Made by a program: the position numbers and the translations under genes
The notes under the pieces: generated by a model
Seen by the model: only the letters and a program-made list of their open reading frames with translations
The model's database searches: none
Told to the model about the DNA's origin: nothing
Shown here: positions 10,693 to 48,656 of the stretch, piece by piece
Layout of the letters: every line of letters begins with the position of its first letter
How positions within the stretch are numbered: the first letter of the stretch is position 1
Assembly: GCA_002269645.1 (NCBI GenBank)
Contig: NIVC01000064.1
Span: 434,001-498,000, forward strand
DNA length: 64,000 bases
Reading direction: 5' to 3'
Source: Macrostomum lignano
Lineage: Eukaryota

Positions 10693-13600
10693 GGTAGTGT
10701 TTTCTGTCTGTTTGTCTTTGTGTCTGTGTTTTTGTCTGTTTGTTTATGTCTTCTGTGTCTTAGCGTGTGTATGCCTTGGCTTTTACCTGTCTGTCTCTGG
10801 TCTCCCTGCCTGTAATTCTTTCTTTTGCTTTACGTCTAATTGGTTTGTTTAGTCTCGTCGTGTGTCTGCGTGCACTTGTAAATGGGTCAAATAAAGTTGC
10901 AAATCTGTCTGTATTGTCTTCCGAAGTGTTAAATATTAACTGCCACCCCCAATATAAAAATTGCCACCCCCTGCAATCACCATCCGCAGAGACTACATCC
11001 TGTGGGTGCAGCACAAAGGCCAGCCTGATCACTTCTCATTCTGCGACTATCCGTTCGTGTTTGACGGCGAGGCCAAGACTAAACTACTGCGCGCAGATGC
11101 GCAATTGAAAATGCATCAAGCGGTTCAGCAGGCACAGACTCAGAATTTCTTCTCGGCTATGACTATGGCCGGTGGGATGGTCAATCCTGTGCTGCTCTTG
11201 CAGGTTGGTCTTATTGTTGCTTTTTCATCTCATCGCTGCGCGCCCTCGTTTAAATGCATTCGTGCACTCATAGCCATTTATTACTACATCATTGTTGACG
11301 TCTTGATATTATCTGTGATATCTCATCTCTCTATGATATCTCATCACTCCTTTATTATACCTTTATCTCTCTGTTCTATGATATCTCATCACTCCTTTAT
11401 TATACCTTTATCTCTCTGTTCTATGATATCTCATCACTCCTTTATTATACCTGTATCTCTCTGCTCTATGATATCTCATCACTCCTTTATTATACATGTA
11501 TCTCTCTGTTCAATGATATCTCATCACTCCTTTATTATACCTGTATCTCTCTGTTCTATGATATCTCATCACTCCTTTATTATAATGTATCTCTCTGTTC
11601 TATGATATCTCATCACTCCTTTATTATAATGTATCTCTCTGTTCTATGATATCTCATCACTCCTTTATTATAATGTATCTCTCTGTTCAATGATATCTCA
11701 TCACTCCTTTATTATACCTGTATCTCTCTGTTCTATGATATCTCATCACTCCTTTATTATAATGTATCTCTCTGTTCTATGATATCTCATCACTCCTTTA
11801 TTATAATGTATCTCTCTGTTCTATGATATCTCATCACTCCTTTATTATAATGTATCTCTCTGTTCAATGATATCTCATCACTCCTTTATTATAATGTATC
11901 TCTCTGTTCTATGATATCTCATCACTCCTTTATTATAATGTATCTCTCTGTTCTATGATATCTCATCACTCCTTTATTATACCTGTATCTCTCTGTTCTA
12001 TGATATCTCATCACTCCTTTATTATACCTGTATCTCTCTGTTCTATGATATCTCATCACTCCTTTATTATACCTGTATCTCTCTGTTCTATGATATCTCA
12101 TCACTCCTTTATTATAATGTATCTCTCTGTTCTATGATATCTCATCACTCCTTTATTATAATGTATCTCTCTGTTCAATGATATCTCATCACTCCTTTAT
12201 TATACCTGTATCTCTCTGTTCAATGATATCTCATCACTCCTTTATTATACCTGTATCTCTCTGTTCTATGATATCTCATCACTCCTTTATTATAATGTAT
12301 CTCTCTGTTCTATGATATCTCATCACTCCTTTATTATACCTGTATCTCTCTGTTCTATGATATCTCATCACTCCTTTATTATACCTGTATCTCTCTGTTC
12401 AATGATATCTCATCACTCCTTTATTATACCTGTATCTCTCTGTTCAATGATATCTCATCACTCCTTTATTATACCTGTATCTCTCTGTTCTATGATATCT
12501 CATCACTCCTTTATTATAATGTATCTCTCTGTTCTATGATATCTCATCACTCCTTTATTATACCTGTATCTCTCTGTTCAATGATATCTCATCACTCCTT
12601 TATTATACCTGTATCTCTCTGTTCAATGATATCTCATCACTCCTTTATTATAATGTATCTCTCTGTTCAATGATATCTCATCACTCCTTTATTATACCTG
12701 TATCTCTCTGTTCAATGATATCTCATCACTCCTTTATTATACCTGTATCTCTCTGTTCAATGATATCTCATCACTCCTTTATTATACCTGTATCTCTCTG
12801 TTCTATGATATCTCATCACTCCTTTATTATAATGTATCTCTCTGTTCAATGATATCTCATCACTCCTTTATTATACCTGTATCTCTCTGTTCAATGATAT
12901 CTCATCACTCCTTTATTATAATGTATCTCTCTGTTCAATGATATCTCATCACTCCTTTATTATAATGTATCTCTCTGTTCTATGATATCTCATCACTCCT
13001 TTATTATACCTGTATCTCTCTGTTCAATGATATCTCATCACTCCTTTATTATAATGTATCTCTCTGTTCAATGATATCTCATCACTCCTTTATTATACCT
13101 GTATCTCTCTGTTCTATGATATCTCATCACTCCTTTATTATAATGTATCTCTCTGTTCTATGATATCTCATCACTCCTTTATTATAATGTATCTCTCTGC
13201 TCTATGATATCTCATTTCCTCTATGATATCTCTACTCTATGATATCTAATCTCTCTATGATATGTTTTTGCTCTATGATATCTCATCTCTGCTCTATGAT
13301 ATCTCATGTCTATGATCTCTAACCTTATCTATAATACTCCATGTCTCCATTGTGTATCATCTCACTTTCCTATTCTCTATGGCATCTTATAGTATTTCCC
13401 TCATCTCTCCTCGCTATCCTCCCCCTCAGTTCTCCCATCTCCCCTCTCCTTCGCCCAGGTCCGCCGGGACAACCTGGTCGGGGACGCCATCAGCCACCTC
13501 AGCAAGTTCCCGCCCGAAGAGCTGCGCAAACCGTTGCGCGTGAAATTCGTTGGCGAAGAGGCTCAGGACGAGGGCGGCGTGTCCAAGGAGTTTTTCCAGA

Positions 13601-14496
13601 TGATTTTCCGAGAAATACTCGACCCCCTGTACGGCATGTTCCGCAGCTTCGATTCCAATTTGATTTGGTTCAATTTCGTGTCGCTAGAAGATGCCAGCCT
13701 GTTCCATCTGATTGGCATCCTGTGCGGCCTGGCCATCTACAATAACTTCCTAGCCGGGGTGGCCTTCCCCCTGGCCATGTACAAGAAACTGCTGGGTCTC
13801 AAGCCCACTCTAGAGGATCTGAAAGAGCTCGATCCTACAATTGGTCGCAATCTGCAGCATCTGCTAGAAGCAGAGTCTGCCGAGGATGTCGAGTCGCTAA
13901 TGCTGACCTTTGAAATCGAGTTCGACTATTACGGCGAGCTTCGCCGCCAGCCGTTGAGCGATCGGCCCGACGAGCCCGTTGTCATGGGCAACCGGCAACG
14001 CTACGTGGACGCCTACGTTGATTACATGTTCAATACCGGCTGCAAAGAGTCCTACGCTGCGTTTCACGACGGTTTTCACAAAGTGTGTGGCGGTCACGTG
14101 CTGGCCCTGTTCGAACCGGCCGAGCTGAGGGCCATGCTAATTGGCGAAGAAGACCATTTTGACTGGGCCCAGCTGCAGAAGAATGCCGAATATCTCGGCG
14201 TGTACTATGCCAAGCACGAGGTGATTGTCAATTTCTGGTCCGTGTTTCATCACGATTTCACAGAGGCGCAGAAGAGGAGATTTTTGCACTTTCTCACCGG
14301 CTGCGACCGGGTCCCCATGCAGGGCATGTCGGCCGTGAAAATCCGCATCCAGCCTGTGCACGGCGGCGCCGCCTACCTGCCTGTGGCGCACACCTGCTAT
14401 AATCTGCTAGACCTGCCCGTCTATCCTGATAAAGACTCGCTCAGGCGGAAACTGACTCAGGCTATTGAGCAGACTGAAGGATTTGCGCTGGTTTGA
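5689..14496 (+). CDS. HERC4: HERC3/HERC4-like E3 ubiquitin ligase (RCC1-like domain + C-terminal HECT), ~1120 aa
   Basis: Exons 5689-6006, 6334-6848, 7690 or 7709-8167, 8402-8707, 9292-9791, 10990-11203, 13459-14496, with GT-AG introns. RCC1 repeats ([43 protein letters not shown]), small-HERC linker motifs ([28 protein letters not shown]) and HECT ([25 protein letters not shown], catalytic [14 protein letters not shown], terminal EGFALV). The start codon and the exon 3 acceptor are uncertain; orthology to HERC4 versus HERC3 is not resolved. Confidence 0.92.
6024..6200. repeat. (TCTG)n microsatellite in HERC intron 1
   Basis: Direct reading. Confidence 0.95.
6940..7680. repeat. Minisatellite, ~34 bp unit (gaagcatcagggagatgaggaatcagcagcccct), HERC intron 2
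   Basis: Tandem copies ending about 25 nt before the acceptor. Confidence 0.92.
8186..8310. repeat. (GACA)n microsatellite in HERC intron 3
   Basis: Direct reading; reverse orientation of the TCTG tracts. Confidence 0.92.
8780..9140. repeat. Minisatellite, 22 bp unit (tatgggtcattcagtaggtcaa), HERC intron 4
   Basis: Tandem copies. Confidence 0.92.
9800..10770. repeat. Compound (TCTG)n array with periodic ttagtgcc interruptions, HERC intron 5
   Basis: Direct reading. Confidence 0.95.
11310..13310. repeat. Minisatellite, 43/45 bp units (atgatatctcatcactcctttattatacctgtatctctctgttct), HERC intron 6
   Basis: About 2 kb of tandem copies in two length variants; degenerate at the right end. Confidence 0.95.
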
Positions 14497-14559: not shown

Positions 14560-14990
14560 TTGTCCCAGATCCTCACTTGCTGTTCCAGCCTCCCAAATCC
14601 TCAGTTGCTTTGCCAGCCTCCTAGATCCTCAGTTGCTTTGCCAGCCTCCCAAATCCTCAGTTGCTGGGCCAGCCTCCCAGATCCTCAGTTGCTGGGCCAG
14701 CCTCCCAGATCCTCAGTTGCTGGGCCAGCCTCCCAAATCCTCAGTTGCTTTGCCAGCCTCCTAGATCCTCAGTTGCTTTGCCAGCCTCCTAGATCCTCAG
14801 TTGCTTTGCCAGCCTCCCAGATCCTCAGTTGCTGGGCCAGCCTCCCAGAGTGTCAGTTGCTGGGCCAGCCTCCCAGATCCTCAGTTGCTGGGCCAGCCTC
14901 CCAGATCCTCACTTGCTGGGCCAGCCTCCCAAATCCTCGGTTGCTTTGCCAGCCTCCCAGATCCCCAGTTGCTGGGCCACCGCCGCCACT
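14560..14990. repeat. Minisatellite, 28 bp unit (cctcccagatcctcagttgctgggccag), just downstream of the HERC stop codon
   Basis: Tandem copies; same family as 22198-22590 and 24569-24592. Confidence 0.92.
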
Positions 14991-16555: not shown

Positions 16556-18612
16556 GCCCTCTAATACCAGTTTTGGCTTACATTTTCTCAGAAAAATGAC
16601 AATTCAAAATCACTTCATCCGTATACCTGAGTAATGATGACAGTCAAAGCTATTTATTAACAAAACCTGTTCAATTTTGATCACAGCACCCACACTGCCT
16701 TGCGCTAACTATGTTGTTTAGATTTATGTGCTGAACCTGCCGGGTACATGCAGAGTTTGCCTTTCCACACCAACATATTAAAGAGCATTATTTTATTTAA
16801 AGGCCCTGTTTATGATTTTTGTTATGATAAATAAATGAAAATTGCTGCCAGAACTCGCCCACCGCTGAAAGCATGCTGTTTTCTTTTGAGTAGGCTGTCT
16901 ACACGATATACGATAAAAAGGGTACAAATGTTTGATTTGCATTTTCAATTTATAATTTTTCCAATAACGGTTTCTAGGATGCTTTCTGGGCTACTTTACG
17001 AGTTCAGATGTTTTCTCAGGATTGATGCATTTCTAGTCAGCCATCTTGTCAGCAGGAATTGGTGTGCAATGCATTTCTTGTCAGCAGGAATTGGTGTGCA
17101 ATGCATTTCTTGTCAGCAGGAATTGGTGTGCAATGCATTCCTTGTCAGCAGGAATTGGTGTGCAATGCATTTCTTGTCAACAGGAATTGGTGTGCAATGC
17201 ATTCCTTGTCAGCCATCTTGTCAGCAGGAATTGGTGTGCAATGCATTTCTTGTCAGCAGGAATTGGTGTGCAATGCATTTCTTGTCAGCAGGAATTGGTG
17301 TGCAATGCATTCCTTGTCAGCAGGAATTGGTGTGCAATGCATTTCTTGTCAGCAGGAATTGGTGTGCAATGCATTCCTTGTCGGCAGGAATTAGTGTGCA
17401 ATGCATTCCTTGTCATCAGGAATTGGTGTGCAATGCATTCCTTGTCAGCCATCTTGTCAGCAGGAATTGGTGTGCAATGCATTCCTTGTCAGCAGGAATT
17501 GGTGTGCAATGTATTTCTTGTCAGCAGAAATTGGTGTGCAATGCATTTCTTGTCAGCAGGATTTGGTGTGCAATGCATTCCTTGTCAGCAGGAATTGGTA
17601 TGCAATGCATTCCTTGTCAGCAGGAATTGGTGTGCAATGCATTCCTTGTCAGCAGGAATTGGTGTGCAATGCATTTCTTGTCAACAGGAATTGGTGTGCA
17701 ATGCATTCCTTGTCAGCCATCTTGTCAGCAGGAATTGGTGTGCAATGCATTTCTTGTCAGCAGGAATTGGTGTGCAATGCATTTCTTGTCAGCAGGAATT
17801 GGTGTGCAATGCATTCATTGTCAGCCATCTTGTCAGCAGGAATTGGTGTACAATGCATTTCTTGTCATCAGGAATTGGTGTGAAATGCATTCCTTGTCAG
17901 CCATCTTGTCAGCAGGAATTGGTGTGCAATGCATTTCTTGTCAGCAGGAATTGGTGTGCAATGCATTTCTTGTCAGCAGGAATTGGTGTGCGATGCATTC
18001 CTTGTCAGCAGGAATTGGTGTGCAATGCATTTCTTGTCAGCAGGAATTGGTGTACAATGCATTTCTTGTCAGCAGGAATTGGTGTGCAATGCATTTCTTG
18101 TCATCAGGAATTGGTGTGCAATGCATTTCTTGTCAGCAGGAATTGGTGTGCAATGCATTCCTTGTCAGCAGGAATTGGGGTGCAATGCATTCCTTGTCAG
18201 CAGGAATTGGTGTACAATGCATTTCTTGTCAGCAGGAATTGGTGTGCAATGCATTCCTTGTCAGCAGGAATTGGTGTACAATGCATTTCTTGTCAGCAGG
18301 AATTGGTGTGCAATGCATTCCTTGTCAGTAGGAATTAGTGTGCAATGCATTTCTTGTCAGCAGGAATTGGGGTGCAATGCATTTCTTGTCAGCAGGAATT
18401 GGTGTGCAATGCATTTCTTGTCAGCAGGAATTGGTGTGCAATGCATTTCTTGTCAGCAGGAATTGGTGTGCAATGCATTCCTTGTCAGCAGGAATTGGTA
18501 TGCAATGCATTCCTTGTCAGCAGGAATTGGTGTACAATGCATTTCTTGTCAGCAGGAATTGGTGTGCAATGCATTCCTTGTCAGCCATCTTGTCAGCAGG
18601 AATTGGTGTACA

Positions 18613-20831: not shown

Positions 20832-21613
20832 TACAATGCATTTCTTGTCAGCAGGAATTGGTGTGCAATGCATTCCTTGTCAGTAGGAATTGGTGTGCAA
20901 TGCATTTCTTGTCAGCAGGAATTGGGGTGCAATGCATTTCTTGTCAGCAGGAATTGGTGTGCAATGCATTCCTTGTCAGCCATCTTGTCAGCAGGAATTG
21001 GTGTGCAATGCATTCCTTGTCAGCCATCTTGTCAGCAGGAATTGGTGTGCAATGCATTTCTTGTCAGCAGGAATTGGTGTGCAATGCATTTCTTGTCAGC
21101 AGGAATTGGTGTGCAATGCATTCCTTGTCAGCCATCTTGTCAGCAGGAATTGGTGTGCAATGCATTCCTTGTCAGCCATCTTGTCAGCAGGAATTGGTGT
21201 GCAATGCATTCCTTGTCAGCAGGAATTGGTGTACAATGCATTTCTTGTCAGCAGGAATTGGTGTGCAATGCATTCCTTGTCAGCCATCTTGTCAGCAGGA
21301 ATTGGTGTACAATGCATTTCTTGTCAGCAGGAATTGGTGTGCAATGCATTCCTTGTCAGTAGGAATTGGTGTACATGTGCATTCAGACACACGTACATTT
21401 TCTACATTGTAGAACATTCCAACATGTGCGGTATTGCTTGGGATACTGTCAAAAAACATTAAGCATTGAGTCCATTTTCGTATTAATAAATATGTATATA
21501 TTTGATTAGCTACTCAATAATAAATCGCTCCATAATCTCTTATTTAGATAATAGTAATAGTTCCGTGATCAAACTGCGCGCAATCAATTCGATTCAAGTA
21601 GAGAAAGTGTGCA

Positions 21614-22121
21614 TTAATTAAAGTTCTCATAAATCGACGGCGGCAGCAGCTCCAGCAGGCAAATACCTGTCACATTCTCGATGGTTAATGTGTTGGTCCG
21701 ATGATGAGTCACCAGTCGTTCCAGGCTCTGGTGCCAGATGCCATTCTTGGGATCTACCGAGTACTGCTGGCTGCCAGTGGAACCCGATACCCGCTGCTGG
21801 ATGATCACGTGATAGGCCTCGGCTCGCTGCCATCGGATGGACAGCACGAGCTTTTCGCCGCTCTGCCTGATTAGGAAGGCACCCGGCTGACTCCGGCGGA
21901 GTAGCCGCTCCGCTGACCATCGGTCCAGGTGATCGTGCACCAGTTGCTGGCAGCGGGAGGCCACGGAGTCTGCCGGGCCGCCCAACGGGTAGGAGACCGG
22001 CCGGTGTCGTAGAAAGGCGGTCAGGCAGGTGCGGTCCAGCTGCTGATTGCAGTGGTCGCAGTGGTAGCCCTGCGCATTGGTGGTGGCAGTTGGGTTGGTT
22101 TGGGATTGACGCCATTCAGAG
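21614..22121 (-). CDS. Terminal exon encoding a Vav-like half C1 finger plus SH2 domain
   Basis: QGYHCDHC...RTCL resembles the second half of the Vav C1 finger. SH2 motifs: LDRWSAERLL, PGAFLIRQS (conserved Arg), LVLSIRW, YHVII, SLERLVTHH. Acceptor cccgcag| at 22122; stop at 21614. Confidence 0.8.
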
Positions 22122-22197
22122 CTGCGGGCTGTCGTGTGCTTCTTAACTGGTGCTGATCGGGTGAGGCAATTCCAAGGTCTCAACTTAGTAGGTCCCC

Positions 22198-22590
22198 TCC
22201 CAGATCCCCAGCTGCTGGGCCAGCCTCCCAAATCCTCAGTTGCTTTGCCAGACTCCTAGATCCCCAGTTGCTGGGCTAGCCTCCCAGATCCCCAGTTGCT
22301 GGGCCAGCCTCCCAGATCCTCAGTTGCTGGGCCAGCCTCCCAGATCCCCAGTTGCTGGACCAGCCTCCCAGATCCTTAGTTGCTGGGCCAGCCTCCCAGA
22401 TCCTCAGTTGCTGGATCAGCCTCCCAGATCCTCAGTTGCTGGGCCAGCCTCCCAGATCCTTAGTTGCTGGGCCAGCCTCCCAGATCCTCAGTTGCTGGAT
22501 CAGCCTCCCAGATCCTCAGTTGCTGGACCAGCCTCCCAGACCCTCAGTTGCTGGGCCACTAGCCTCCCAGATCCTCAGTTGCTGGGCCAC
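22198..22590. repeat. 28 bp minisatellite, same family as 14560-14990
   Basis: Same unit consensus. Confidence 0.92.
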
Positions 22591-23081
22591 TTAAACCTCC
22601 TTCTTGGATGCACTACATGTGCTCTATTGAGTACCCAGGATGTCAGTTCAGTGAGAAGTAAAAATTGTCTGATTCCTTTTGCTGTGAATTCATAAGCGTG
22701 CAGTTCTCCTCCAAGAAATTTCCCACCGATTAAAGGTTCGATAAACCAAAGGGACAAAATTTCTGATTCATAAATTGTGCCAACTTTACACAGTAATTAT
22801 TTCGCTTTGATGTGATGTGTTTTTTCTCTTCCGTCTTTGATAAATCGGAAAAAGGCATTCAAAAGATTCAAAAGAAAAAATAATCACCTGCGCCCTTGCC
22901 CATCAATTGAAAAATTTTTGTCCCAGCAATTTCGCATAGAAAACTGCTGTGAGTGGTCTCAAATCTCTCCAAGCATGTCGAAATTGCTTCTTTCCTAAAA
23001 CGGAACTTCTTTGGAAAGATAATTGTCGAAAAACAGGCAAAGAGCGGCAACTTTCTGAAGGCGGATTCGAATAGAAAAGTC

Positions 23082-23088
23082 TATAAAA
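23082..23088 (+). promoter_or_regulatory. TATA box of the neuropeptide-like gene
   Basis: TATAAAA about 90 nt upstream of ATG 23179. Confidence 0.55.
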
Positions 23089-23178
23089 TGGACTCGGGTC
23101 AGAAGCAATTTTTCCGCACCAAGATCTCCAAAAAGTTCTTGCAAAGCAGCCATCATTCTCCCGTAGCGGAAGAAAGCC

Positions 23179-24262
23179 ATGAACTTCAGGAAACTGCAGG
23201 CTGCGATGCTGCTGGTCTGCCTGACTGCGGCTGCTCAGCAGCGGGCTGCCGCCCTGCCAGCTGGCGGATCATCGAGTGCCCCGGTAAGCTGCCTTTGAGG
23301 CTGCAGTTTAGTTGCTGGGGACTACTGGCTCTTGTTGGTTTTTGCAAAGGGAACTGCTGGCGCCCCTTGGTGCTGGCGCCCCCTGGTGCTGGCGCCCCTT
23401 GGTCCTGGCGCCCCCTGGTGCTGGCGCCCCTTGGTCCTGGCGCCCCCTGGTGCTGGAGCCCCCTGGTGCTGGCGCCCCCTGGTGCTGGCGCCCCCTGTTG
23501 CTGGAGCCCCCTGGTGCTGGCGCCCCCTGGTGCTGGTGCCCCCTGGTACTGGCGCCCCCTGGTGCTGGCGCCCCCTGGTGCTGGCGCCCCCTGGTGCTGG
23601 CGCCCCCTGGTGCTGGCGCCCCCTGGTGCTGGCGCCCCCTGGTGCTGGCGCCCCCTGGTGCTGGCGCCCCCTGGTACTGGCGCCCCCTGGTGCTGGCGCC
23701 CCCTGGTGCTGGCGCCCCCTGGTGCTTGCGCCCCTGGTGCTAAAACCCCTGGTGCTAAAACCCCTGGTGCTAAAGCCCCTGGTGCTAAAGCCCCTGGTGC
23801 TAAAACCCCTAGTGCTAAAACCCCTGGTGCTAAAACCCCTGGTGCTAAAACCCCTAGTGCTAAAACCCCTAGTGCTAAAACCCCTGGTGCTAAAGCCCCT
23901 GGTGCTAAAACCCCTGGTGCTAAAACCCCTGGTGCTAAAACCCCTGGTGCTAAAGCCCCTGGTGCTAAAACCCCTGGTGCTAAAACCCCTGGTGCTAAAA
24001 CCCCTAGTGCTAAAACCCCTAGTGCTAAAGCCCCTGGTGCTAAAACCCCTGGTGCTAAAACCCCTGGTTCAATAAAAATCTTCACTTCATTTCTCCTCAA
24101 ACATTTCAGCAGCCCAGCTCGGCCAGTCCCGCGGCCACGCAGATGCCGCAGCCGGAGCAGCCGCGCCTGGACGATCAGCTCAGGGCCACGCGATTCCAGC
24201 TGTACAAGAGGTGCACCAGCGTCTTCCACCCAATGGCCTGCTTCGGAATTTGGCGGCTGTGA
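23179..24262 (+). CDS. Two-exon neuropeptide-like precursor, 85 aa, with a C-terminal cyclic C-X8-C peptide
   Basis: join(23179..23283,24110..24262), donor ccg|gtaagc, acceptor catttcag|, both phase 0. Product MNFRKLQAAMLLVCLTAAAQQRAAALPAGGSSSAP-QPSSASPAATQMPQPEQPRLDDQLRATRFQLYKR-CTSVFHPMACFGIWRL. Shows a signal-peptide-like N-terminus, a spacer and a dibasic KR site. Confidence 0.8.
23346..24067. repeat. 15-16 bp minisatellite in two blocks (ggtgctggcgcccct then ggtgctaaaacccct) filling the intron
   Basis: Direct reading; lies between the GT and AG signals. Confidence 0.95.
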
Positions 24263-24447
24263 CTTCGCTGCGTCACAGCCGCTCTGCATCCGAATTTGAT
24301 GAGCAGCCGAATTGGACTGCATCAAGCGTGATGACGATTGAAAGCATCGCAAATAGTGTGGTTGTTTTTTAGACCTTTAAACGCTTTTCAGTCTCTTACT
24401 ACGAGTTATTTAGACCCGTGACAGTTTTAATAGAAAGGAATTTTGCA

Positions 24448-24453
24448 AATAAA
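24448..24453 (+). terminator. Candidate polyadenylation signal of the neuropeptide-like gene
   Basis: AATAAA about 185 nt after the stop codon. Confidence 0.5.
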
Positions 24454-24681
24454 CGATTATCCATACAGTTTGGTCGGGTTTATGGCAGCAAATCATTTCA
24501 TAATTGGATATTAGTTTGTGTAACGCCAGATCAGTGCTACACTATCGTAGCTGCTGTCTCAGTAAGTAACTGGGCCAGCCTCCCAGATCCTCTTAGACTT
24601 AGCTGCAGGGCTGTCCCGGAGGGGACACAGCGGGAAGGCGCGGGCGCCCATTCCGCTAGTCCCTGAACGGCCGACGCGTCG

Positions 24682-27207
24682 CTATGGACGGAGGGTTGGC
24701 GCCGCCCAGGGAGGTCCCCCAGTGTCGCCAGCAGCTATGGTGCTCTCTGGAAAGGAGAGTTCAGCCCTGCGGGTGGCCCGAAGGTAGCGCATGAGCTGAT
24801 TAAAGTTTTCGGGTTTGCACGCTTCAGTAATAGATGTGTGTGGCCCGAGGTAAGTGAGTCTGGCCCGCGTGAAGGCGGGACAGATGCTGACGAAATGCTC
24901 AGCGGTTTCGTCACCCGAGTTGCAGAAACTACAGGTGGCGTTGGTGGCGTTGCCCTGCAGGTACTGGTGCCTGGAGAAGCAGCCGTGACCAGAGAGGGTC
25001 ATGGTGGCAGCCCGGATGTCTCTGCGCGAGAGGCGCAAGAGGAGCTTCCGGAGCTGGTGAGAGGGCTGAGGGACAGCGCCTCTGGATTGCCTGCAGTTCG
25101 TGCGGTTCGCCCAAGTCGAGCGGTGCTGAGTCCTGATCCACGCTTTGATGCGCGAGTCGATGACACAGCCAGGAATCGGGACAAGAGGTTCGGGGCCGAG
25201 AGAGGAGCCGGAGGCACCAACTTTTGCAAGGGTGTCAGCCAACTCATTTCCTCGGATCCCCACATGCCCCGGAACCCACTTAAGGGTAATTTTGTTGGCG
25301 GAACCCAACACATTGAGGAGTTTGATACAGTCAAGGACTGTAGCAGAGTTGGTGCTGCAGCCACTGATGGCGTGCAAGGCAGCTTGGCTGTCCGAATGGA
25401 AAATGATGTTCTTACCAGTAACGCCAGTGGCGAGAAGCTCTGCAGTGCAGGAGCTGATGGCCAGAACTTCATTTTGGAAAACACTGGAGTTGACCCCAGT
25501 GTATTGAGCGTGGGTAGCGATGACCCTCCCGTTCAGAAAGATTCCAACACCAAAGCCGGTGTTGGCTGACTGCTTAGAACCGTCGGTGTAGCAATGAAGC
25601 TCACCAGGGTTCCAATGGTCATTGATGTTATCGCGCGAGTCGATAGCTACGGAGTAGCGCTGTCTCAGGTTGAGCGTTGAGGCAATGCCATCGGTGAAGA
25701 CGCGATTGGCCTGACACTCGTTGAGAAAGTTGAGGCACAGATCGCTATGCGGGACAAGGTTCCGCTTAGCAGGTGCTCTCATGTAAATGAATTTGACGCC
25801 GGCATCAATTAGACGCCGCGTCGTTCTAGCCGCCTCACCCCTGATGAAGAGGTCAAGAGGCGGAAGATTAAGAAAGGCCCCCATGCCAGCAAAGGGCGTG
25901 GACCTGGTGGCGTTGCAGATGAGCCTACACGCTCTGCCTTGGATCGTGTTGAGCAGGTCTGCATGGCTTTTGACCTGGGTAGCGCTAACCCAGACAACAG
26001 AGGCGTACGTAATGGCAGGTCTAACTACGGAAGTATAGATCCACCAAAGCCGCTTTGGGGATAGACCCCAAGAAGTGCCAAGTGCTCGTCGGAGCTGGGC
26101 CAGGATGGCTGAGGCACGCTTAGCTTTTGCTTTCACGTGGAAGGACCAGTTGAGCCGGTGGTCAAGTGTGACCCCGAGACATCTGGTCTGGTGCGCGAAG
26201 GCAATATCTCTGCCGTAGAGCTGCAGAGGACGTATGTTCCAGCGTAGTCTGCTGGTAAACATAATGGCAACGGTTTTGGGCTCAGAGAGTTCCAAACCAT
26301 TGTCATTGGCCCAGGATTCTGCTTTGCGGATAAAGCTCTGCATCAGATCCCTGAGCGTGCTGGGAGACGGTCCTGCCACAATGGCCGTGACGTCATCAGC
26401 ATACCCGACTTTGAAGACGGGGTCAGGTCGGGAGTCACTCAGAAGAGCGTCCATGACCAGGTTCCAGAGCGTCGGGGTGAGGACTCCGCCTTGGGGTCCA
26501 CCCTTACAGACTCTGGTGGAGGCAGTTTGCCCAAGAAGTTGGGCAGTGACCGTACGGTTGGAGATCATGTACATGATCCACCGTATGAGGGTAGCATGAG
26601 CTTTGCGATTTTGAAGGGCCCTCTGAAACGCTTCAAAGATAACGTTGTCGAAGGCGCCAACAATGTCAAGAAAGAGAGCCAGGGCGTAACCGTCACCCAG
26701 TACCGCCCGTTCAATCTTTTCGACAATCGCATGCAGGGCGCTGTCAGTCGACCTCCCGGTACGGAAGGCGTGCTGATTATTGCTGAGGGGCATCGCTGTC
26801 AGCTCGCAGGAGAGCAGCCGCCAGAGAATAAGCCTCTCAGTGAGCTTAAGCATTGCTGACGTTAAGCTAATTGGCCGGAAGGCCTTGACGCTTTGGTAGT
26901 CACCCTTCCCAGGTTTGGGAATAAAGACTACTCGAGCTTCAGTCCAGCTTTTGGGAACGTATCCCAGCTGGATAGAGGCCCGCATAAGATTGCGGGTGAG
27001 TCTCAGGAACGAGGGTATCTTGGCTGCTTCACGAAGGAGAACAGGGTAGATACCATCAGGTCCAGGAGATTTGAAGGGTTTGAAGGTTCTGACCGCACGA
27101 GCGATTAGGTCTTCAGTGACAATGCCCGCCGCTAGGGTGGCTCCATCCATCGAATGGTTGGGCTCCGGTCTAGCAGTAGGTACCCTCGGGAAGAATGTGC
27201 TAAGCAT
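24682..27207 (-). CDS. LINE ORF2, C-terminal part: reverse transcriptase, RNase H, Cys/His knuckle
   Basis: KSPGPDGI, FRPISLTS, FLDIVGAFD, GGPQGGVLTP, YADD; RNase H YTDGSK, SDSQAAL, WVPGHVGIRGNELAD; CSFC...ETAEHFVSIC. Confidence 0.95.
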   Translation of the reverse strand: MLSTFFPRVPTARPEPNHSMDGATLAAGIVTEDLIARAVRTFKPFKSPGPDGIYPVLLREAAKIPSFLRLTRNLMRASIQLGYVPKSWTEARVVFIPKPGKGDYQSVKAFRPISLTSAMLKLTERLILWRLLSCELTAMPLSNNQHAFRTGRSTDSALHAIVEKIERAVLGDGYALALFLDIVGAFDNVIFEAFQRALQNRKAHATLIRWIMYMISNRTVTAQLLGQTASTRVCKGGPQGGVLTPTLWNLVMDALLSDSRPDPVFKVGYADDVTAIVAGPSPSTLRDLMQSFIRKAESWANDNGLELSEPKTVAIMFTSRLRWNIRPLQLYGRDIAFAHQTRCLGVTLDHRLNWSFHVKAKAKRASAILAQLRRALGTSWGLSPKRLWWIYTSVVRPAITYASVVWVSATQVKSHADLLNTIQGRACRLICNATRSTPFAGMGAFLNLPPLDLFIRGEAARTTRRLIDAGVKFIYMRAPAKRNLVPHSDLCLNFLNECQANRVFTDGIASTLNLRQRYSVAIDSRDNINDHWNPGELHCYTDGSKQSANTGFGVGIFLNGRVIATHAQYTGVNSSVFQNEVLAISSCTAELLATGVTGKNIIFHSDSQAALHAISGCSTNSATVLDCIKLLNVLGSANKITLKWVPGHVGIRGNELADTLAKVGASGSSLGPEPLVPIPGCVIDSRIKAWIRTQHRSTWANRTNCRQSRGAVPQPSHQLRKLLLRLSRRDIRAATMTLSGHGCFSRHQYLQGNATNATCSFCNSGDETAEHFVSICPAFTRARLTYLGPHTSITEACKPENFNQLMRYLRATRRAELSFPESTIAAGDTGGPPWAAPTLRP

Positions 27208-28421
27208 ATGCTGAAGTACTTCTTCAGGGTCTTTAGTAAGAGAGCCATCATCTTTTTTATCATGGCTAATTTGGACATTTTGTCCATTGTAAGGGCCTTG
27301 ACAAGCCTAGAAGTAGGTCTGTCTTGATCCAATTCATTGCAGAATTGGCGCCACTTACATTCCTTGGCCTTGCGCACTTCAGATTTGAAATTGCGGGAGG
27401 CTTGCCGGAAAAGCTCCATGTCCTCCGGGTTTCCGGTCTTCATGGCACGGCGATGAAGGCTTTTGGCCTTCCGCCTGAGTTTCCCCAGCTCCGGGTTCCA
27501 CCACGGCGCCGAGGTCTTGCCTCTGTAGGCGCGAGCAGGACAAGCCGCTTCGTAGGCTGCAATAATGCAACCTGTCAGCGTCTCAGCCATATGATCCACA
27601 TCCTCGCAGGTCTCAATCGGACGTAAGTCCGTGAGTTCCTGCAGGTGCAGATCAAGGGCAGCCTTGTAGGCCGCCCAATCAGTGTTGCGGATATTGCGTC
27701 TCCAAGTGATCGGAGACTGGGTTTTAGTGTCCGCGATATTAAAGGCGATAAAGCAGTGGTCAGACAGGGAGGGCTCCTCAGACCAGACTCTCCACTCCTT
27801 GACTCTGTCAAAGAGTCTTGGGGTAACGAGTGTGGCGTCGAGGACCTCGGTCCATCTGCCATTATTAAAGGTAGGAGTGCTGCCGCGGTTGCAGAGCATG
27901 AGGTTTGTGTTAGAGATGAGGGCCAGAAGCTCCTCTCCTCTAGTGTTGGTATCTTTGCTGCCCCAGTGCTTGTGGTGCGCGTTGAGGTCGCCCCCTAAGC
28001 ACAGCTCAGCGTTCTGGGACTCGCAGTACTGCGCAAGGCGCAGTAAACTCTCGGGAGCAGGGTCTCTGTCGCCTGGGATATAAACCGAGGCAACAAGACA
28101 CGTACGCGGAGAGAAATGATTAGATTGGATGACGCAAAGGTCTCCATCAGAGAGATCAGTCCTCAGCCAAGCCTGGAGATGGCTAGCAGCGAGGATAGCC
28201 GCTCTAGGGCGGCTGTTCCCCGGGCCACACACATAAAAATCAGAGTAGCCAGAGGGAATGTTGGGCAACTTACCGTTGCGCATCCAGGGTTCCTGGATCA
28301 GGATGAGGCCTGGCCTGTACAGCTCAGCAATCTTCATCAGATTTACTGACGCAGATACGCAATGCTGTAAATTTATTTGCAGACAGAATGTCGCTCCTTT
28401 GGCAGCGTGGAGCTTAGTCAT
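27132..28421 (-). CDS. LINE ORF2, N-terminal part: apurinic-like endonuclease, frameshifted near 27253-27258
   Basis: LQINLQH, LIQEPW, GGDLNAHH..WGS, PTF, LDATL, SDH motifs. Confidence 0.92.
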   Translation of the reverse strand: MTKLHAAKGATFCLQINLQHCVSASVNLMKIAELYRPGLILIQEPWMRNGKLPNIPSGYSDFYVCGPGNSRPRAAILAASHLQAWLRTDLSDGDLCVIQSNHFSPRTCLVASVYIPGDRDPAPESLLRLAQYCESQNAELCLGGDLNAHHKHWGSKDTNTRGEELLALISNTNLMLCNRGSTPTFNNGRWTEVLDATLVTPRLFDRVKEWRVWSEEPSLSDHCFIAFNIADTKTQSPITWRRNIRNTDWAAYKAALDLHLQELTDLRPIETCEDVDHMAETLTGCIIAAYEAACPARAYRGKTSAPWWNPELGKLRRKAKSLHRRAMKTGNPEDMELFRQASRNFKSEVRKAKECKWRQFCNELDQDRPTSRLVKALTMDKMSKLAMIKKMMALLLKTLKKYFSICLAHSSRGYLLLDRSPTIRWMEPP

Positions 28422-28460
28422 ACTGTATTAAATGCAATATCTGGCTAGAGCCCAGGGCCA

Positions 28461-30023
28461 TCAAGGAGACTTGGACAACAGATCGTCCTCGTCCCAGGCC
28501 GCTGGGGCTTGACTGGGAGATGGGAGTTGGTCGACGTCCATGGCCTCCTCACCCCCACCGGCCCCCCCAGCAGAGTCCTCAGGCTCCGATGACAGGATGG
28601 AGGAAGCTTCCTCACCTGCATCTTTACCTTCAGACCCCACCAAGGTGGCCGAGGAGAGCTCGGATTCCGAAGACCCGGCCTCGTCCTCAACTCCTTCTCC
28701 GACTGGCAGGTTTGGTTCCCGGGGCTCGGCCGGAGCCGTTACCGCGGTCGCCGAACTGCTGCTAGCAGAGGGGCGAGATGCAGCTTTGGCTTTGGGATCG
28801 GCTTGCGCCTTTCCTTGGGCCTTAGACTGCGCCCCGCTCTTGCCGGAGATGCCGGGGTTGGCAGTAGCCTTCCCTTTGGCAGACTTTCCTCGGCGCAACT
28901 TGAGCTTGAGGGCACCCAGCTGGAAAGAGGATCCATTAGGGTACCGACTCGCCCAAGTGCTGGAAAGGCCGAGGACAATTGAGTTGCCCGTCTCCCCCCT
29001 GCGGACTTTGCGGTGATACACCAGTCCACTAGCAGGGAGGTCGGGGTTCAGACGCAGTAGGACCCGGCGAATAACGTCTGGTCCAGCTGCGGTGCTCTTA
29101 GCAGGGACGAAAACCACATAGGGTATCGTCTTTGGACGCTGGCCCTCGCGAAGAAAAAGAGCTCCACCAAGGTCAGCATCCAAGGAGACCGTCGGTAGCC
29201 GCTGGAGCAGCCGCCGAGCGTCCTCCTCGCTGCTAGGAGCAATAAGAACGAATGTGCTTCGCAGCACCATCCGCTCAACGCCGATGGAGATTCCCTCCTC
29301 GACAGTCAGCTCAATCAGATAGGAGTCAACAGCACTCCACACTTTTTGAAGCTGATCAGTGGTCCAGTCCTGGTCGCGACCTTGGATGATCACTCCCGGG
29401 ATTTTGGCCTTGGCCTTCGCCGCAAAGGTAGCTCCCGAAGGAACCTCCTTGTTGGCAGTGGCCATTAGTTGCGCCGTGGTTTCGGCCTCAGCAGCCGCGG
29501 CAGCAGCTCCAGGGAGCGCCGCCGCTGAACTACTGGAGCTTCCACCGGCCGGCCCGCCTGGTTGCCTTGGGACTCCAGTCGCTTCAGCATCCATGGTGGA
29601 CGCCGCCGCTTTGGCCCCCGCAGCTCCCTTCTTGGCCTGCCTTTTGGCGCGTTGTTTAGCGCGTTTGCGCTCAAGCCGAGCCCGCTGAGCTTCATCGGAT
29701 CTGCCAGATTTGGCCGGTCCTTTAGGCTCAGAGCTCGCGGTTCCCTTAGATCCACCAGCGGAGCTGGCAGGTCTTAGGGTATTTTGAGTTTGGTAGCTCT
29801 GGTCGGATCTGCCAGCAGAGCCAGCCGGTCCTTCCTTTGCCACAGTTGAATCAGTCGGTTGGGATCTGCCAGCAGGGCCGGCCGGTCCTTCGGACTGAGG
29901 TTGGGGTTTAGAAGGGTCCCCGTCCCTAGAAATAGCTTGTTTATCCATAGTCGGCTCGAAGGCCATGATAAAAGGTTGGTGGGCTACCCTCAAAGGGGCG
30001 CGGTACCCACCCGGCCGCTCCAC
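28461..30023 (-). CDS. LINE ORF1 (basic patches, possible DUF4780-like domain, acidic tail)
   Basis: Open 520-codon frame directly upstream of ORF2; the domain resemblance is from memory. Confidence 0.8.
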   Translation of the reverse strand: MERPGGYRAPLRVAHQPFIMAFEPTMDKQAISRDGDPSKPQPQSEGPAGPAGRSQPTDSTVAKEGPAGSAGRSDQSYQTQNTLRPASSAGGSKGTASSEPKGPAKSGRSDEAQRARLERKRAKQRAKRQAKKGAAGAKAAASTMDAEATGVPRQPGGPAGGSSSSSAAALPGAAAAAAEAETTAQLMATANKEVPSGATFAAKAKAKIPGVIIQGRDQDWTTDQLQKVWSAVDSYLIELTVEEGISIGVERMVLRSTFVLIAPSSEEDARRLLQRLPTVSLDADLGGALFLREGQRPKTIPYVVFVPAKSTAAGPDVIRRVLLRLNPDLPASGLVYHRKVRRGETGNSIVLGLSSTWASRYPNGSSFQLGALKLKLRRGKSAKGKATANPGISGKSGAQSKAQGKAQADPKAKAASRPSASSSSATAVTAPAEPREPNLPVGEGVEDEAGSSESELSSATLVGSEGKDAGEEASSILSSEPEDSAGGAGGGEEAMDVDQLPSPSQAPAAWDEDDLLSKSP

Positions 30024-30491: not shown

Positions 30492-31560
30492 ACTGGGTAG
30501 ATAAGGAATAGACTTAGGTTAGATGGGGAATAGACACTAGGGTAGATGGGGAATAGACACTGGGTAGATAAGGAATAGACTTAGGTTAGATGGGGAATAG
30601 ACACTAGGGTAGATGGGGAATAGACACTGGGGTAGATGGGGAATAGACACTGGGGTAGATGGGGAATAGACACAGGGGTATATGGGGAATAGACACAGGG
30701 GTAGATGGGGAATAGACACAGGGGTAGATGGGGAATAGACACAGGGGAAAATGGGGAATAGACACAGGGGTAGATGGGGAATAGACACAGAGGTATATGG
30801 GGAATAGACACAGAGTAGATGGGGAATAGACACAGGGGTAGATGGGGAATAGACACAGGGGAAAATGGGGAATAGACACAGGGGTAGATGGGGAATAGAC
30901 ACAGAGGTATATGGGGAATAGACACAGAGTAGATGGGGAATAGACACAGTGGTATATGGGGAATAGACACAGAGTAGATGGGGAATAGACACAGGGGTAG
31001 ATGGGGAATAGACACAGGGGTAGATGGGGAATAGACACAGAGTAGATGGGGAATAGACACAGAGTAGATGGGGAATCGACACAGAGGTACATGTGGAATA
31101 GACACAGGGGTATATGGGGAATAGACACAGGGGTATATGGGGAATAGACACAGGGGTATATGGGGAATAGACACTGGGGTATATGGGGAATAGACACAGG
31201 GGTAGATGGGGAATAGACACTAGGGTAGATGGGGAATAGACACTGGGGTATATGGGGAATAGACACAGGGGTAGATGGGGAATAGACACAGGGGTATATG
31301 GGGAATAGACACAAGGGGTATATGGGGAATAGACACAGAGTAGATGGGGAATAGACACAGGGGTAGATGGGGAATAGACACAAGGGGTATATGGGGAATA
31401 GACACAGAGTAGATGGGGATAGACACAGGGGTAGATGGGGAATAGACACAGGGGTAGATGGGGAATAGACACAGAGTAGATGGGGAATAGACACAGGGGT
31501 AGGCAGGGAATAGACGCAGGATAGGCAGGGAATAGACGCAGGGTAGAAGGGGAGTAGACA
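30492..31560. repeat. Minisatellite, ~23 bp unit (ggggtagatggggaatagacaca)
   Basis: Tandem copies starting just past the donor of the CH exon. Confidence 0.93.
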
Positions 31561-31588
31561 GGGTAGATGAGAGTCCCCGCAGCCTCAC

Positions 31589-31957
31589 CAGTCCCTGCAG
31601 CGACAGCAGCCTCCGCAGGCCAGTGAGCACCCTGTCGGGCCTCCGCAGCAGCAGCAGGTCCTCCGCCTCAAACAGGTCCTCCCGCTTCATCTGGAACTCA
31701 TGGACGCATTTGGACAGAAAAAATTTCACATTCCTCCGACCAAACATCTCGGAATTCATCGAATAGAACGACACCGTTCCGTCTCCTTCCGGCGATATCC
31801 GGCCGTTGCTAAGGACGCTAAGAAGACAGCAGAGATCCTCGCCGTCAGCCAGCAGCCGACAGAGATCCTCGGACGTGCTGCATTGCTGCCCGAAATCGGC
31901 GTCTTTGTTCAACAACTGTCGAATTTGTTGCAGAAACTCTCCCACTGAAGCAGACAT
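31589..31957 (-). CDS. First coding exon encoding a Vav-type calponin homology domain
   Basis: LCRLLADGEDLCCLL and NVKFFLSKCVHEFQMKREDLFEAEDL match Vav CH (LAQALRDGVLLCQLL; NIRTFLSTCCEKFGLKRSELFEAFDL, recalled). ATG at 31957; phase-0 donor ctg|gtgagg at 31588. Confidence 0.85.
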
Positions 31958-42241: not shown

Positions 42242-42662
42242 AATCGACCTCGTGAAACGAGGAGCGGTCCGTAGCAAAAAAAACGTGTGGAAACGAGTTT
42301 TACCTCATGGGGCCACGCAAATTGTTAAGATAAGGAGCCAGCACTGAATGTCTATGGCTCTGTCTGACTCTGTCTATGCTAGTCTGGCATCATGAGGTAA
42401 AGGTGAAAAACTCGTTCCCACTCCAGGTTGCTAATTATAGAACTCATTGCACAAGCCTTCGAACATGTTTCTGATTTTGTTCGAATGAGATTCATTGAAG
42501 CAAAAGTAAAATTCTTAGAAAAAGTTCAAGCTATTTGCCTGCTCCCATCCAGCATCTTTGCTGTATTTGCACGAATGCGCACTGTCTCGAAATATATTTG
42601 AATTCAAATCTTCAAATATGGTATTGATTTAACATAATCAACGCAATCATTCATATTCCAGA

Positions 42663-43740: not shown

Positions 43741-43818
43741 AATGACTGTTTCGAGGGTGCTATTAGCCGAATCTTCAGAAAGTCTGGTGCGTTGTCTCAG
43801 CTTGCAGTGAAGTTGGCA

Positions 43819-43826
43819 TTTATATA
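43819..43826 (-). promoter_or_regulatory. TATA box of copy A
   Basis: TATATAAA about 80 nt upstream of the ATG, conserved in copy B. Confidence 0.65.
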
Positions 43827-46935: not shown

Positions 46936-47316
46936 AGTTATACTCGTAAATGCGAGAGTATTAAAATTAATTGTTATAATTCAAATAACCTGTCCCATAT
47001 TCGCGAGCGCATGACTTATTGACAAAAGTATTTGACATGGAAGCAAACCATACAGAAGTTAAAGTTAAGAAAGTTAAAGTCTAAAGTTAGAGTCTAAGTT
47101 AAAGTCTAAAGGTAGAAAGTTAAAAAACTCTTGCAAATTTGCTTAAGTTATTGCAGTTTGCCTTCTTGGTTCACTATTCGAACTCGACGATACACGAACC
47201 GCAGTATCTCAACTGCCGTGCATTTATATTTGAATGTAAGACTTGGCACAGTAAAAATGTCCAACACAACATCCCATTATCTCTGTAGATTTCTCATATG
47301 GAGTCCTTATAGCTTA

Positions 47317-48560: not shown

Positions 48561-48648
48561 AAGGACTGTTTTGAGGGTGCTATGTAGTCGAAAAACCGAA
48601 TTTTTAGAAATGTATGGTGCGTTGGCTCAGTTTGCAATGAAGTTGGCA

Positions 48649-48656
48649 TTTATATA
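48649..48656 (-). promoter_or_regulatory. TATA box of copy B
   Basis: TATATAAA in a promoter block shared with copy A. Confidence 0.65.

What the first reader, a model, noticed from the sequence alone, without database searches (positions are those of the whole stretch)
23082..24453. Hidden neuropeptide-like precursor with a C-terminal disulfide-ring peptide
Absent from the ORF track because a satellite-filled intron splits it. Seen: TATA, ATG, hydrophobic leader, phase-matched intron, KR site, peptide CTSVFHPMACFGIWRL, stop and AATAAA. The C-X8-C ring resembles elevenin/L11 (recalled core CTRFVFAPACRG), while FHPMACF and the C-terminal position resemble allatostatin-C/somatostatin precursors (FNPISCF). 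The mixed character may mark a divergent or undescribed family; novelty is unverified.
Basis: partly seen in the sequence, partly recalled or inferred. Interest (0 to 1): 0.75.

Follow-up and report, generated by a model that had tools for sequence, protein, structure and literature searches.

The report
Unannotated cyclic-peptide hormone gene candidate
A small two-exon gene model in a Macrostomum flatworm genome looks like a hormone or neuropeptide precursor that would release a 16-residue disulfide-ring peptide, but no transcript or relative could be found to confirm it.

Summary
These are TATAAAA 23082-88, ATG 23179, a 35-codon leader exon, a GTAAGC donor, and an 826-nt intron that is mostly 15/16-bp satellite. 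They continue with a pyrimidine tract and CAG|CAG acceptor, exon 2 (24110-24262), KR, CTSVFHPMACFGIWRL, TGA and AATAAA 24448-53. The model gives an 85-aa prepropeptide.

My own scans find this arrangement rarely in shuffled copies of the window: 2 of 300 for the tailored scan, and about 0.02 per window for a generic scan that also requires TATA and a poly(A) signal. The coding sequence has GC3 of 0.80, like known exons here, while its flanks are about 40% GC. I think a real gene is likely (about 0.7), though this rests on sequence features alone.

No homologue appeared in 5.8 billion protein clusters, 1.84 billion representatives, Pfam, JGI metagenomes or paper texts. A neighbouring LINE is 79-96% identical to Macrostomum lignano entries, so the host is Macrostomum.

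The peptide resembles both allatostatin-C and elevenin at p of about 0.01 each. The precursor layout (single C-terminal copy, dibasic site, phase-0 pro-region intron, FxP-xx-C-F) fits allatostatin-C. The 8-residue loop and the GIWRL tail do not. Three of four elevenin-defining features fail. Family membership is unresolved.

The parts
23082..23088 (+). TATA box (TATAAAA), 97 nt upstream of the ATG
   Evidence: Read directly. It is the only + strand TATAAA between 20 and 27 kb. A neighbouring secreted-protein ORF has TATAAA at -103 from its ATG.
23179..23283 (+). Coding exon 1 (35 codons). It holds the signal-peptide-like leader M1-A19 (23179-23235) and the start of the pro-region.
   Evidence: Translation. 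The n-region has R4 and K5. The h-region L6-A19 has mean Kyte-Doolittle hydropathy 2.04, and there is an A-x-A motif before Q20. The proposed frame scores best of the three forward frames in a codon log-likelihood test. The cleavage site is inferred, because SignalP was not available.
23284..24109 (+). Phase-0 intron of 826 nt, GTAAGC...CAG, with satellites at 23355-24068
   Evidence: Exon 1's frame hits a stop four codons into the intron. The 15-bp satellite unit is related to the array at 40151-41057. Splicing is inferred and has not been observed.
24110..24262 (+). Coding exon 2 (50 codons plus TGA), with an alternative acceptor at 24113
   Evidence: GC3 is 0.88, against 0.41 GC in the 3' flank. 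The proposed frame is best of the forward frames.
24206..24211 (+). Dibasic K68-R69 prohormone-convertase site
   Evidence: Read from the sequence. Cleavage is inferred from the general rules of prohormone processing.
24212..24259 (+). Predicted mature peptide CTSVFHPMACFGIWRL, with a C70-C79 ring of 8 residues and a 6-residue tail
   Evidence: The calculated monoisotopic [M+H]+ with the disulfide is 1865.865.
24263..24470 (+). 3' UTR with AATAAA at 24448-24453. The end coordinate is approximate.
   Evidence: The poly(A) site itself has not been observed.

Best explanation
This is a small, unannotated two-exon gene of a Macrostomum flatworm that encodes an 85-residue secreted prepropeptide.

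Proposed mechanism, with every step inferred from sequence:
1. The N-terminal leader targets the protein to the ER and is removed, probably after A19.
2. C70 and C79 form a disulfide.
3. A prohormone convertase cuts after K68-R69.
4. This releases the C-terminal 16-mer cyclo(C1-C10)-CTSVFHPMACFGIWRL. It needs no C-terminal trimming because the stop codon follows directly.
5. The peptide acts as a neuropeptide or hormone on a G-protein-coupled receptor.

In layout the precursor works like an allatostatin-C/somatostatin-type precursor. It has one peptide copy at the extreme C-terminus behind a dibasic site, a phase-0 intron in the pro-region, and an F-x-P-x-x-C-F core. Its loop is enlarged to 8 residues and it carries an extra GIWRL tail.

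My layered estimates are:
- real expressed gene: about 0.7
- secreted, KR-processed cyclic peptide: about 0.55
- true allatostatin-C-type orthologue: about 0.25
For: - All gene signals are present and in phase.
- The tailored composite model occurs in 2 of 300 shuffles. The generic model with TATA and poly(A) occurs 0.02 times per shuffle.
- The other real-window hit of the generic scan is a signal-peptide exon that is duplicated about 4.8 kb away. This suggests the scan picks up real genes.
- Coding GC3 is 0.80, against 0.69-0.73 in the known exons of this window. The flanks are 0.39-0.41 GC. The proposed frame is best of the forward frames in both exons.
- The region is single-copy within the window.
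- The TATA position matches that of a neighbouring secreted-protein ORF.
- Published allatostatin-C-type features are a single C-terminal copy, a phase-0 intron in the pro-region, and an FxP motif in the loop (PMC7536072, PMC9048919).
- The local alignment FHPMACF / FNPISCF scores at p = 0.005 against protostome allatostatin-C peptides.
Against: - There is no transcript evidence.
- No homologue was found anywhere.
- The partial ORFs are not on record in public assemblies.
- The signal peptide was judged by heuristics that are common by chance.
- The scan criteria were set after seeing the candidate.
- Antisense frame 0 of exon 2 scores as well as the sense frame in the codon test.
- Protostome allatostatin-C loops are reported to be always 6 residues and usually contain Asn. 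Here the loop is 8 residues with His in that place, and 5 residues follow the C-F.
- Similarity p-values of about 0.01 do not survive correction for the roughly 10 families tried.
Confidence: 0.55

Rival explanations
1. There is no gene. The model is a chance juxtaposition of an ATG ORF with a hydrophobic start, GT/AG dinucleotides and a short ORF ending in a two-cysteine motif. It would sit in satellite-rich intergenic or intronic DNA, possibly inside an intron of a minus-strand gene.
For: - No transcript or homologue was found.
- Signal-peptide-like ATG ORFs are as common in shuffles as in the window.
- A genome of several hundred Mb holds thousands of such windows, so a 0.7% per-window event is expected many times genome-wide.
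- Minus-strand exons flank the locus: SH2 at about 21700-21940 and a CH-like exon at 31220-31957.
Against: - TATA at -97 and AATAAA at +186 are independent additions. With them included, the expectation is about 0.02 per window even for a generic model.
- There is a sharp GC3 contrast with the flanks, and the proposed frame is preferred in both exons.
- The donor is strong (GTAAG), and a branch-point-like TTCAC and a long pyrimidine tract sit before the acceptor.
Confidence: 0.25
2. The gene is real and the peptide is the flatworm elevenin (L11-type) ligand, with the peptide moved to the C-terminus of the precursor.
For: - The C-X8-C ring has the same size as in all 39 distinct published elevenins I aligned.
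- The best single alignment of any family is to Platynereis PDCTRFVFHPSCRGVAA. It shares CT..VFHP..C.G[VI], scores 38, and has p = 0.014.
- The Gly two residues after the second Cys, the residue most sensitive to Ala substitution in Aplysia, is kept.
Against: - The invariant C-R-G is C-F-G here.
- The near-invariant D/N before the first Cys is absent.
- The F-x-P core is shifted by one position, so the alignment needs two gaps.
- Elevenin lies directly after the signal peptide and is followed by a long tail, whereas here it is at the C-terminus.
- The elevenin HMM aligns only 5 residues, at 3 bits.
- The top-5 mean score has p = 0.051.
Confidence: 0.07
3. The gene is real and the product is secreted, but it is not a neuronal signal. 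It could be an antimicrobial or defence peptide, a gland or adhesive secretion component, a toxin or a pheromone. Precursors of such peptides also use the layout of signal peptide, pro-piece, KR and C-terminal peptide.
For: - The layout is shared with many non-neuronal secreted peptides, according to general knowledge of families such as amphibian skin peptides with C-terminal disulfide loops.
- No receptor or expression data exist.
- The peptide is hydrophobic (GRAVY 0.92, pI about 8.1).
- The window holds other lineage-specific secreted-protein ORFs.
Against: - Net charge is only about +1 and the peptide is 16 residues long, which is atypical for cationic antimicrobial peptides.
- The FxP-xx-C-F motif and the phase-0 intron fit an allatostatin-C-type hormone gene.
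Confidence: 0.1
4. Only the 39-aa unspliced ORF from M46 (24143-24262) is translated, or none is and the RNA is non-coding. No secreted product is made.
For: This ORF exists on its own with an ATG.
Against: - It would lack a signal peptide, leaving the two cysteines and the KR site without a role.
- It has no promoter signal of its own. The nearest TATA is upstream of exon 1.
Confidence: 0.03

Closest known systems
Allatostatin-C-type precursors: protostome ASTC, such as Drosophila QVRYRQCYFNPISCF and Lottia SHVMCLVNLISCF, and echinoderm ASTC-type 'SS1', such as KCIGRFQPFSMPC
   Same: - One peptide copy lies at the extreme C-terminus of a short precursor, behind a basic cleavage site, and has two cysteines.
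- A phase-0 intron interrupts the pro-region.
- The loop holds an F-x-P motif.
- F-x-P, then two residues, then C and an aromatic residue is spaced as in arthropod and nematode ASTC.
- C-x3-F-x-P is spaced as in echinoderm ASTC-type peptides.
   Different: - The loop is 8 residues, not the 6 reported as invariant in protostomes (10 in echinoderms).
- His stands where the common Asn would be.
- Five further residues (GIWRL) follow the C-F that normally ends the peptide.
- Mollusc and annelid ASTCs, the nearest phyla with data, are of the C-L-V-N type and lack FxP.
- No receptor data exist.
Elevenin (L11) peptides, such as Aplysia RPRIDCTRFVFAPACRGVSA and Platynereis PDCTRFVFHPSCRGVAA
   Same: The ring is C-X8-C. 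Thr follows the first Cys, as in several lophotrochozoan elevenins. The four residues VFHP are identical to Platynereis. Gly and then an aliphatic residue sit at +2 and +3 after the second Cys.
   Different: - The position in the precursor differs: elevenin follows the signal peptide directly.
- The invariant Arg of C-R-G is Phe here.
- The conserved Asp/Asn before the first Cys is missing.
- The F-x-P register is shifted by one residue.
Other C-terminal disulfide-ring hormones: melanin-concentrating hormone, somatostatin-14, urotensin II and the protostome SSRP-like peptides such as Aplysia apUII
   Same: Each has a single cyclic peptide at the C-terminus behind a dibasic site. MCH also has a C-X8-C ring.
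   Different: None shows sequence similarity above the shuffles (p = 0.29-0.68). The WK motif that defines the somatostatin/urotensin/SSRP-like peptides is absent.

Membership tests
Allatostatin-C type | A single peptide copy at the C-terminus of the precursor, preceded by a mono- or dibasic site | tested here: met
   KR at residues 68-69, peptide at 70-85, then the stop codon. The family feature is described.
Allatostatin-C type | [quoted passage not shown] | tested here: met
   Exon 1 is 105 nt, so the intron falls after codon 35 in phase 0. This holds only if the unverified splice model is correct. The family feature is described.
Allatostatin-C type | A cysteine loop of six residues (reported as invariant in protostomes) | tested here: not met
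   The loop is TSVFHPMA, 8 residues.
Allatostatin-C type | Asn within the loop (most members) and/or an FxP motif (many members); an aromatic residue right after the second Cys | tested here: inconclusive
   F-H-P is present and F follows the second Cys. There is no Asn, and a 5-residue tail follows. The local alignment with FNPISCF has p = 0.005-0.011 against shuffles, uncorrected.
Allatostatin-C type | Activates an allatostatin-C/somatostatin-type (rhodopsin gamma) receptor | not testable with these tools
   This needs receptor cloning and a cell assay.
Elevenin | A C-X8-C ring | tested here: met
   compared with the 39 distinct published elevenins from the table (set listed).
Elevenin | An invariant C-R-G after the ring | tested here: not met
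   The sequence here is C-F-G. Arg is present in nearly all listed elevenins, and the oyster and scallop peptides have L or I. Replacing R16 with Ala raises the EC50 5- to more than 1000-fold.
Elevenin | Asp or Asn immediately before the first Cys | tested here: not met
   The residue before the first Cys is the Arg of the KR site (compared).
Elevenin | The peptide lies directly after the signal peptide and is followed by a cleavage site and a long C-terminal remainder | tested here: not met
   The peptide is at the extreme C-terminus, after a 48-residue spacer (compared).
Secreted prohormone (general) | An N-terminal signal peptide | tested here: inconclusive
   The n-region has R4 and K5, the uncharged h-region has 14 residues with mean hydropathy 2.04, and there is an AxA motif. 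SignalP was not available, and the heuristic alone is not rarer than chance.
Secreted prohormone (general) | Expressed and spliced as modelled | not testable with these tools
   No transcriptome of this organism can be reached. The precursor and both partial ORFs are absent from the protein collections.

The most novel reading that the evidence does not exclude
The peptide is the so far unreported allatostatin-C-type ligand of flatworms. Its 8-residue loop would bridge the protostome 6-residue form and the echinoderm 10-residue form, showing that loop size is not fixed in protostomes. A bolder version is that it preserves features of a common ancestor of the allatostatin-C and elevenin peptides, two families currently treated as unrelated.
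Probability: 0.2. Interest if true: 0.6.

Novelty: new member of a known kind. Interest (0 to 1): 0.4.

Why it matters
Flatworm peptide signalling is less well mapped than that of molluscs, annelids or arthropods. A 2018 survey of liver-fluke receptors noted receptors similar to allatostatin receptors and stated that such ligands had not been reported in flatworms. A verified cyclic peptide in Macrostomum, a laboratory model with RNAi and transgenesis, would supply a candidate ligand for receptor deorphanisation. It would also test whether the loop size of allatostatin-C-type peptides is really invariant in protostomes.

The case also shows how short prohormone genes split by repeat-filled introns can escape annotation. 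The precursor has no match among proteins that include Macrostomum lignano entries. If the model turns out to be wrong, it stands as a caution about hand-built gene models in satellite-rich DNA.

Tried and rejected
Searches that found nothing:
- The word-indexed search of 5.8 billion protein clusters with the 85-aa precursor gave no hit at E of 10 or below.
- phmmer against 1.84 billion representatives gave one hit (P0091, E = 2.9e-4). It is an Ala/Pro-rich repeat in an unrelated 344-aa protein, it covers residues 28-70 and not the peptide, and I rejected it as low-complexity.
- Pfam gave nothing.
- The JGI metagenome scan with exon 2 returned 600 pattern matches, none confirmed.
- A full-text search for VFHPMAC, CTSVFHP and FHPMACF found 0 papers.
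- Motif searches in the planarian prohormone supplements and the cestode npp supplements found 0.
- Exact-sequence look-ups of five window ORFs were not on record, including the two 39-aa partial ORFs. The spliced precursor was not accepted for look-up.
- Rfam and tRNA scans of the window were empty.
- No paralogue of the precursor exists in the window.

Methods that did not help:
- hmmsearch with small elevenin and ASTC profiles aligns too little of such short peptides, only 5 residues at 3 bits. I replaced it with BLOSUM62 local alignment tested against shuffles that keep the cysteines fixed.

Ideas set aside:
- MCH, somatostatin-14, urotensin II, Aplysia apUII, CCAP, GGNamide and the luqin C-terminal peptide show no similarity above the shuffles.
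- I considered that the CH-like exon (31220-31957) and the SH2 exon (about 21700-21940) on the minus strand form one Vav-like gene with the candidate in its intron. The sequence between them is filled by the LINE and satellites, leaving no room for DH, PH and C1 exons. I left this open.
- The Koziol et al. 2016 flatworm neuropeptide paper is not held in the library.

Full report
**1. What is in the sequence.**
Reading 22800-24700 and translating confirms every element of the finding.
- TATAAAA lies at 23082-88 and the ATG at 23179.
- Exon 1 is 105 nt and encodes MNFRKLQAAMLLVCLTAAAQQRAAALPAGGSSSAP. It ends before GTAAGC at 23284. Its frame meets a stop four codons into the intron.
- The intron is 826 nt. 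TRF places a 16-bp satellite (unit TGCTGGCGCCCCCTGG) and a related 15-bp satellite over 714 nt of it, at 23355-24068.
- The intron ends with a TTCAC branch-point-like element, a long pyrimidine tract and CAG|CAG. This gives acceptors at 24110 or 24113.
- Exon 2 (24110-24262) encodes QPSSASPAATQMPQPEQPRLDDQLRATRFQLYKR-CTSVFHPMACFGIWRL followed by TGA.
- AATAAA follows 186 nt later, at 24448-53.
- The mechanical ORF list shows only two 39-aa fragments, so the gene is invisible without splicing.

**2. Is it more than chance?**
I wrote two scans.
- The tailored scan requires a signal-peptide-like ATG ORF, a GTRAG donor, an in-phase pyrimidine-rich AG acceptor within 2.5 kb, and an ORF ending in [KR][KR]-C-X4-12-C-X0-8-stop. 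It returns exactly one model in the window, the candidate. It returns a model in 2 of 300 order-3 Markov shuffles.
- Those criteria were set after the fact, so I also ran a generic scan. It accepts any dibasic site near the C-terminus of a 50-200-aa two-exon model and requires a TATA box 40-150 nt upstream and a poly(A) signal 50-400 nt downstream. It gives 2 models in the real window against 0.02 per shuffle.
- The second real hit is a signal-peptide exon, MASNCKQLFFLAVLAVGISAAVC. It is present twice in a tandem duplication and so is probably a true gene start.
- My signal-peptide criterion alone is not informative: 17 in the window against 15.3 in shuffles.

Independent support comes from composition.
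- The known exons in the window are HECT, the CH-like exon, SH2 and two secreted-protein ORFs. They have GC3 of 0.69-0.73. The candidate coding sequence has 0.80, while its 5' and 3' flanks are 0.39-0.41 GC.
- The proposed frame is the best forward frame in both exons.
- The TATAAA at 23082 is the only one on the + strand between 20 and 27 kb.
- A neighbouring secreted-protein ORF has its TATAAA at -103, an equivalent position.
- The exons and flanks are single-copy within the window.

I put the probability of a real gene at about 0.7.

**3. Organism and surroundings.**
- A HERC4-like gene ends at 14496 on the + strand. Its HECT domain is only 54% identical or less to anything in the database.
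- In a neighbour-joining tree this domain is sister to trematodes plus cestodes, with 159 of 200 bootstraps.
- The intact LINE immediately downstream (minus strand, 24682-30023, with endonuclease, RT and RNase H) settles the host. Its ORF2 matches UniRef proteins of Macrostomum lignano at 87%, 79% and 58%, and a metaclust entry at 96%, over partial lengths. The window therefore comes from M. lignano or a close congener.
- The protein collections include M. lignano entries, yet none resembles the precursor. The gene is therefore not annotated there.
- The window is very rich in tandem repeats, with more than 20 arrays.
- Minus-strand exons flank the locus: an SH2 exon at about 21700-21940 and a CH-like exon with an ATG at 31220-31957. 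The candidate may therefore be nested in an intron of an opposite-strand gene. That would not argue against it.

**4. Likely mechanism (inferred).**
- The leader has two basic residues (R4 and K5), a 14-residue uncharged hydrophobic core (mean hydropathy 2.04) and A17-A18-A19 before Q20. This is a standard secretory signal with probable cleavage after A19.
- The 48-residue spacer is 62% Pro, Ser, Ala and Gln and has no cysteines.
- K68-R69 is a classical prohormone-convertase site.
- The peptide runs to the stop codon, so no carboxypeptidase or amidation step is needed.
- The only two cysteines outside the leader, C70 and C79, would close an 8-residue ring.
- The product is a hydrophobic, weakly basic 16-mer, with monoisotopic [M+H]+ of 1865.865 in the oxidised form.
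- An R60-x-x-R63 site could give additional products.

**5. Comparison with known families.**
Using published sequences, I aligned the peptide to 39 elevenins and 11 allatostatin-C-type peptides. I compared the scores with 3000 shuffles that keep the cysteines in place.
- Both families score above the shuffles. Elevenin's best score is 38, against Platynereis PDCTRFVFHPSCRGVAA, with p = 0.014. Protostome allatostatin-C's best score is 31, FHPMACF against FNPISCF, with p = 0.005.
- MCH, somatostatin-14, urotensin II, apUII, CCAP, GGNamide and the luqin C-terminal peptide do not score above the shuffles.
- With about ten families tried, neither p-value is decisive.

The defining features separate the two families better.
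- Elevenin is a C-X8-C peptide placed directly after the signal peptide. It has a near-invariant D/N before the first Cys and an invariant C-R-G after the second. Only the ring size is met here.
- Allatostatin-C-type precursors carry one peptide at the C-terminus behind a basic site. Their genes share a phase-0 intron in the pro-region, and many members have FxP in the loop. All of these are met.
- The spacing C-x3-F-x-P equals that of echinoderm allatostatin-C-type peptides. The spacing F-x-P-x2-C-aromatic equals that of arthropod and nematode ones.
- Against membership, the protostome loop is reported as always six residues and usually contains Asn. Here it is eight with His in that place, and five residues follow the C-F.

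I therefore say the precursor works like an allatostatin-C-type precursor. I do not file it as a member, and I estimate orthology at about 0.25.

**6. Novelty and verdict.**
- The general kind is well known: a short prohormone that yields a C-terminal disulfide-ring peptide.
- The specific peptide has no match in any collection or paper text searched.
- An allatostatin-type ligand had not been reported from flatworms as of a 2018 survey.
- All evidence is ab initio from one sequence.
- Interest is moderate. The candidate is plausible and cheaply testable for neuropeptide biologists working on a tractable flatworm model, but it is not a surprising kind of object.

Noticed in passing
window 24682-30023, minus strand: An apparently intact non-LTR retrotransposon lies directly 3' of the candidate gene. 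It has a 520-aa ORF1-like protein without a Pfam match, then endonuclease, reverse transcriptase and RNase H ORFs. Its ORF2 is 79-96% identical over partial lengths to Macrostomum lignano database entries. This identifies the host genus.
   Followed up: partly
window 43650-43740 and 48470-48560, minus strand; duplicated blocks 42662-43994 and 47316-48837: Two copies of an identical signal-peptide-like first exon (MASNCKQLFFLAVLAVGISAAVCDMGSEDG, followed by a GT donor) sit in a tandem duplication of 80-95% identity. They are probably two paralogous secreted-protein genes whose downstream exons I did not resolve.
   Followed up: partly
window 55112-55846 and 59945-60700, minus strand: Two paralogous single-exon ORFs of 244 and 251 aa have signal-peptide-like starts and many cysteines. 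Their only Pfam matches are weak PAN-domain hits below threshold. Neither exact sequence is on record in public assemblies.
   Followed up: partly
window 21614-22231 (SH2 at about 21700-21940) and 31220-31957, minus strand: An SH2-domain exon ending in a stop codon lies upstream of the candidate. An ATG-initiated exon with a weak calponin-homology match, resembling by eye the N-terminus of Vav proteins, lies beyond the LINE. If the two belong to one gene, the candidate and the LINE lie in its intron.
   Followed up: no
window 7766-8056, 10976-11200 and 13456-14496, plus strand: These are exons of a HERC4-like E3 ubiquitin ligase, comprising an RCC1 region and a complete HECT domain. The best database identity is only 54%, although Macrostomum lignano proteins are in the database.
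   Followed up: partly
window 49597-53704, plus strand: An LTR-retrotransposon coding region with a gag-like DUF7041, a protease-like segment, RT, RNase H and integrase. A weak Pao-peptidase match suggests a BEL/Pao-type element.
   Followed up: no
window 14563-14979 and 22196-22589, with a single unit near 24563-24593; 17044-18585 and 20834-21384; 23355-24068 and 40151-41057: The same satellite families recur at several places. A 28-bp unit flanks the candidate gene on both sides. A 32-bp unit forms two large arrays upstream. The intron's 15-bp unit is related to an array about 16 kb away. The window holds more than 20 tandem arrays in all.
   Followed up: partly
window 23150-23178: A pyrimidine-rich stretch ending in AG (ccatcattctcccgtAG) lies 12 nt before the ATG. 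It could serve as a spliced-leader trans-splice acceptor. From my own knowledge, Macrostomum uses that mechanism. This is untested.
   Followed up: no
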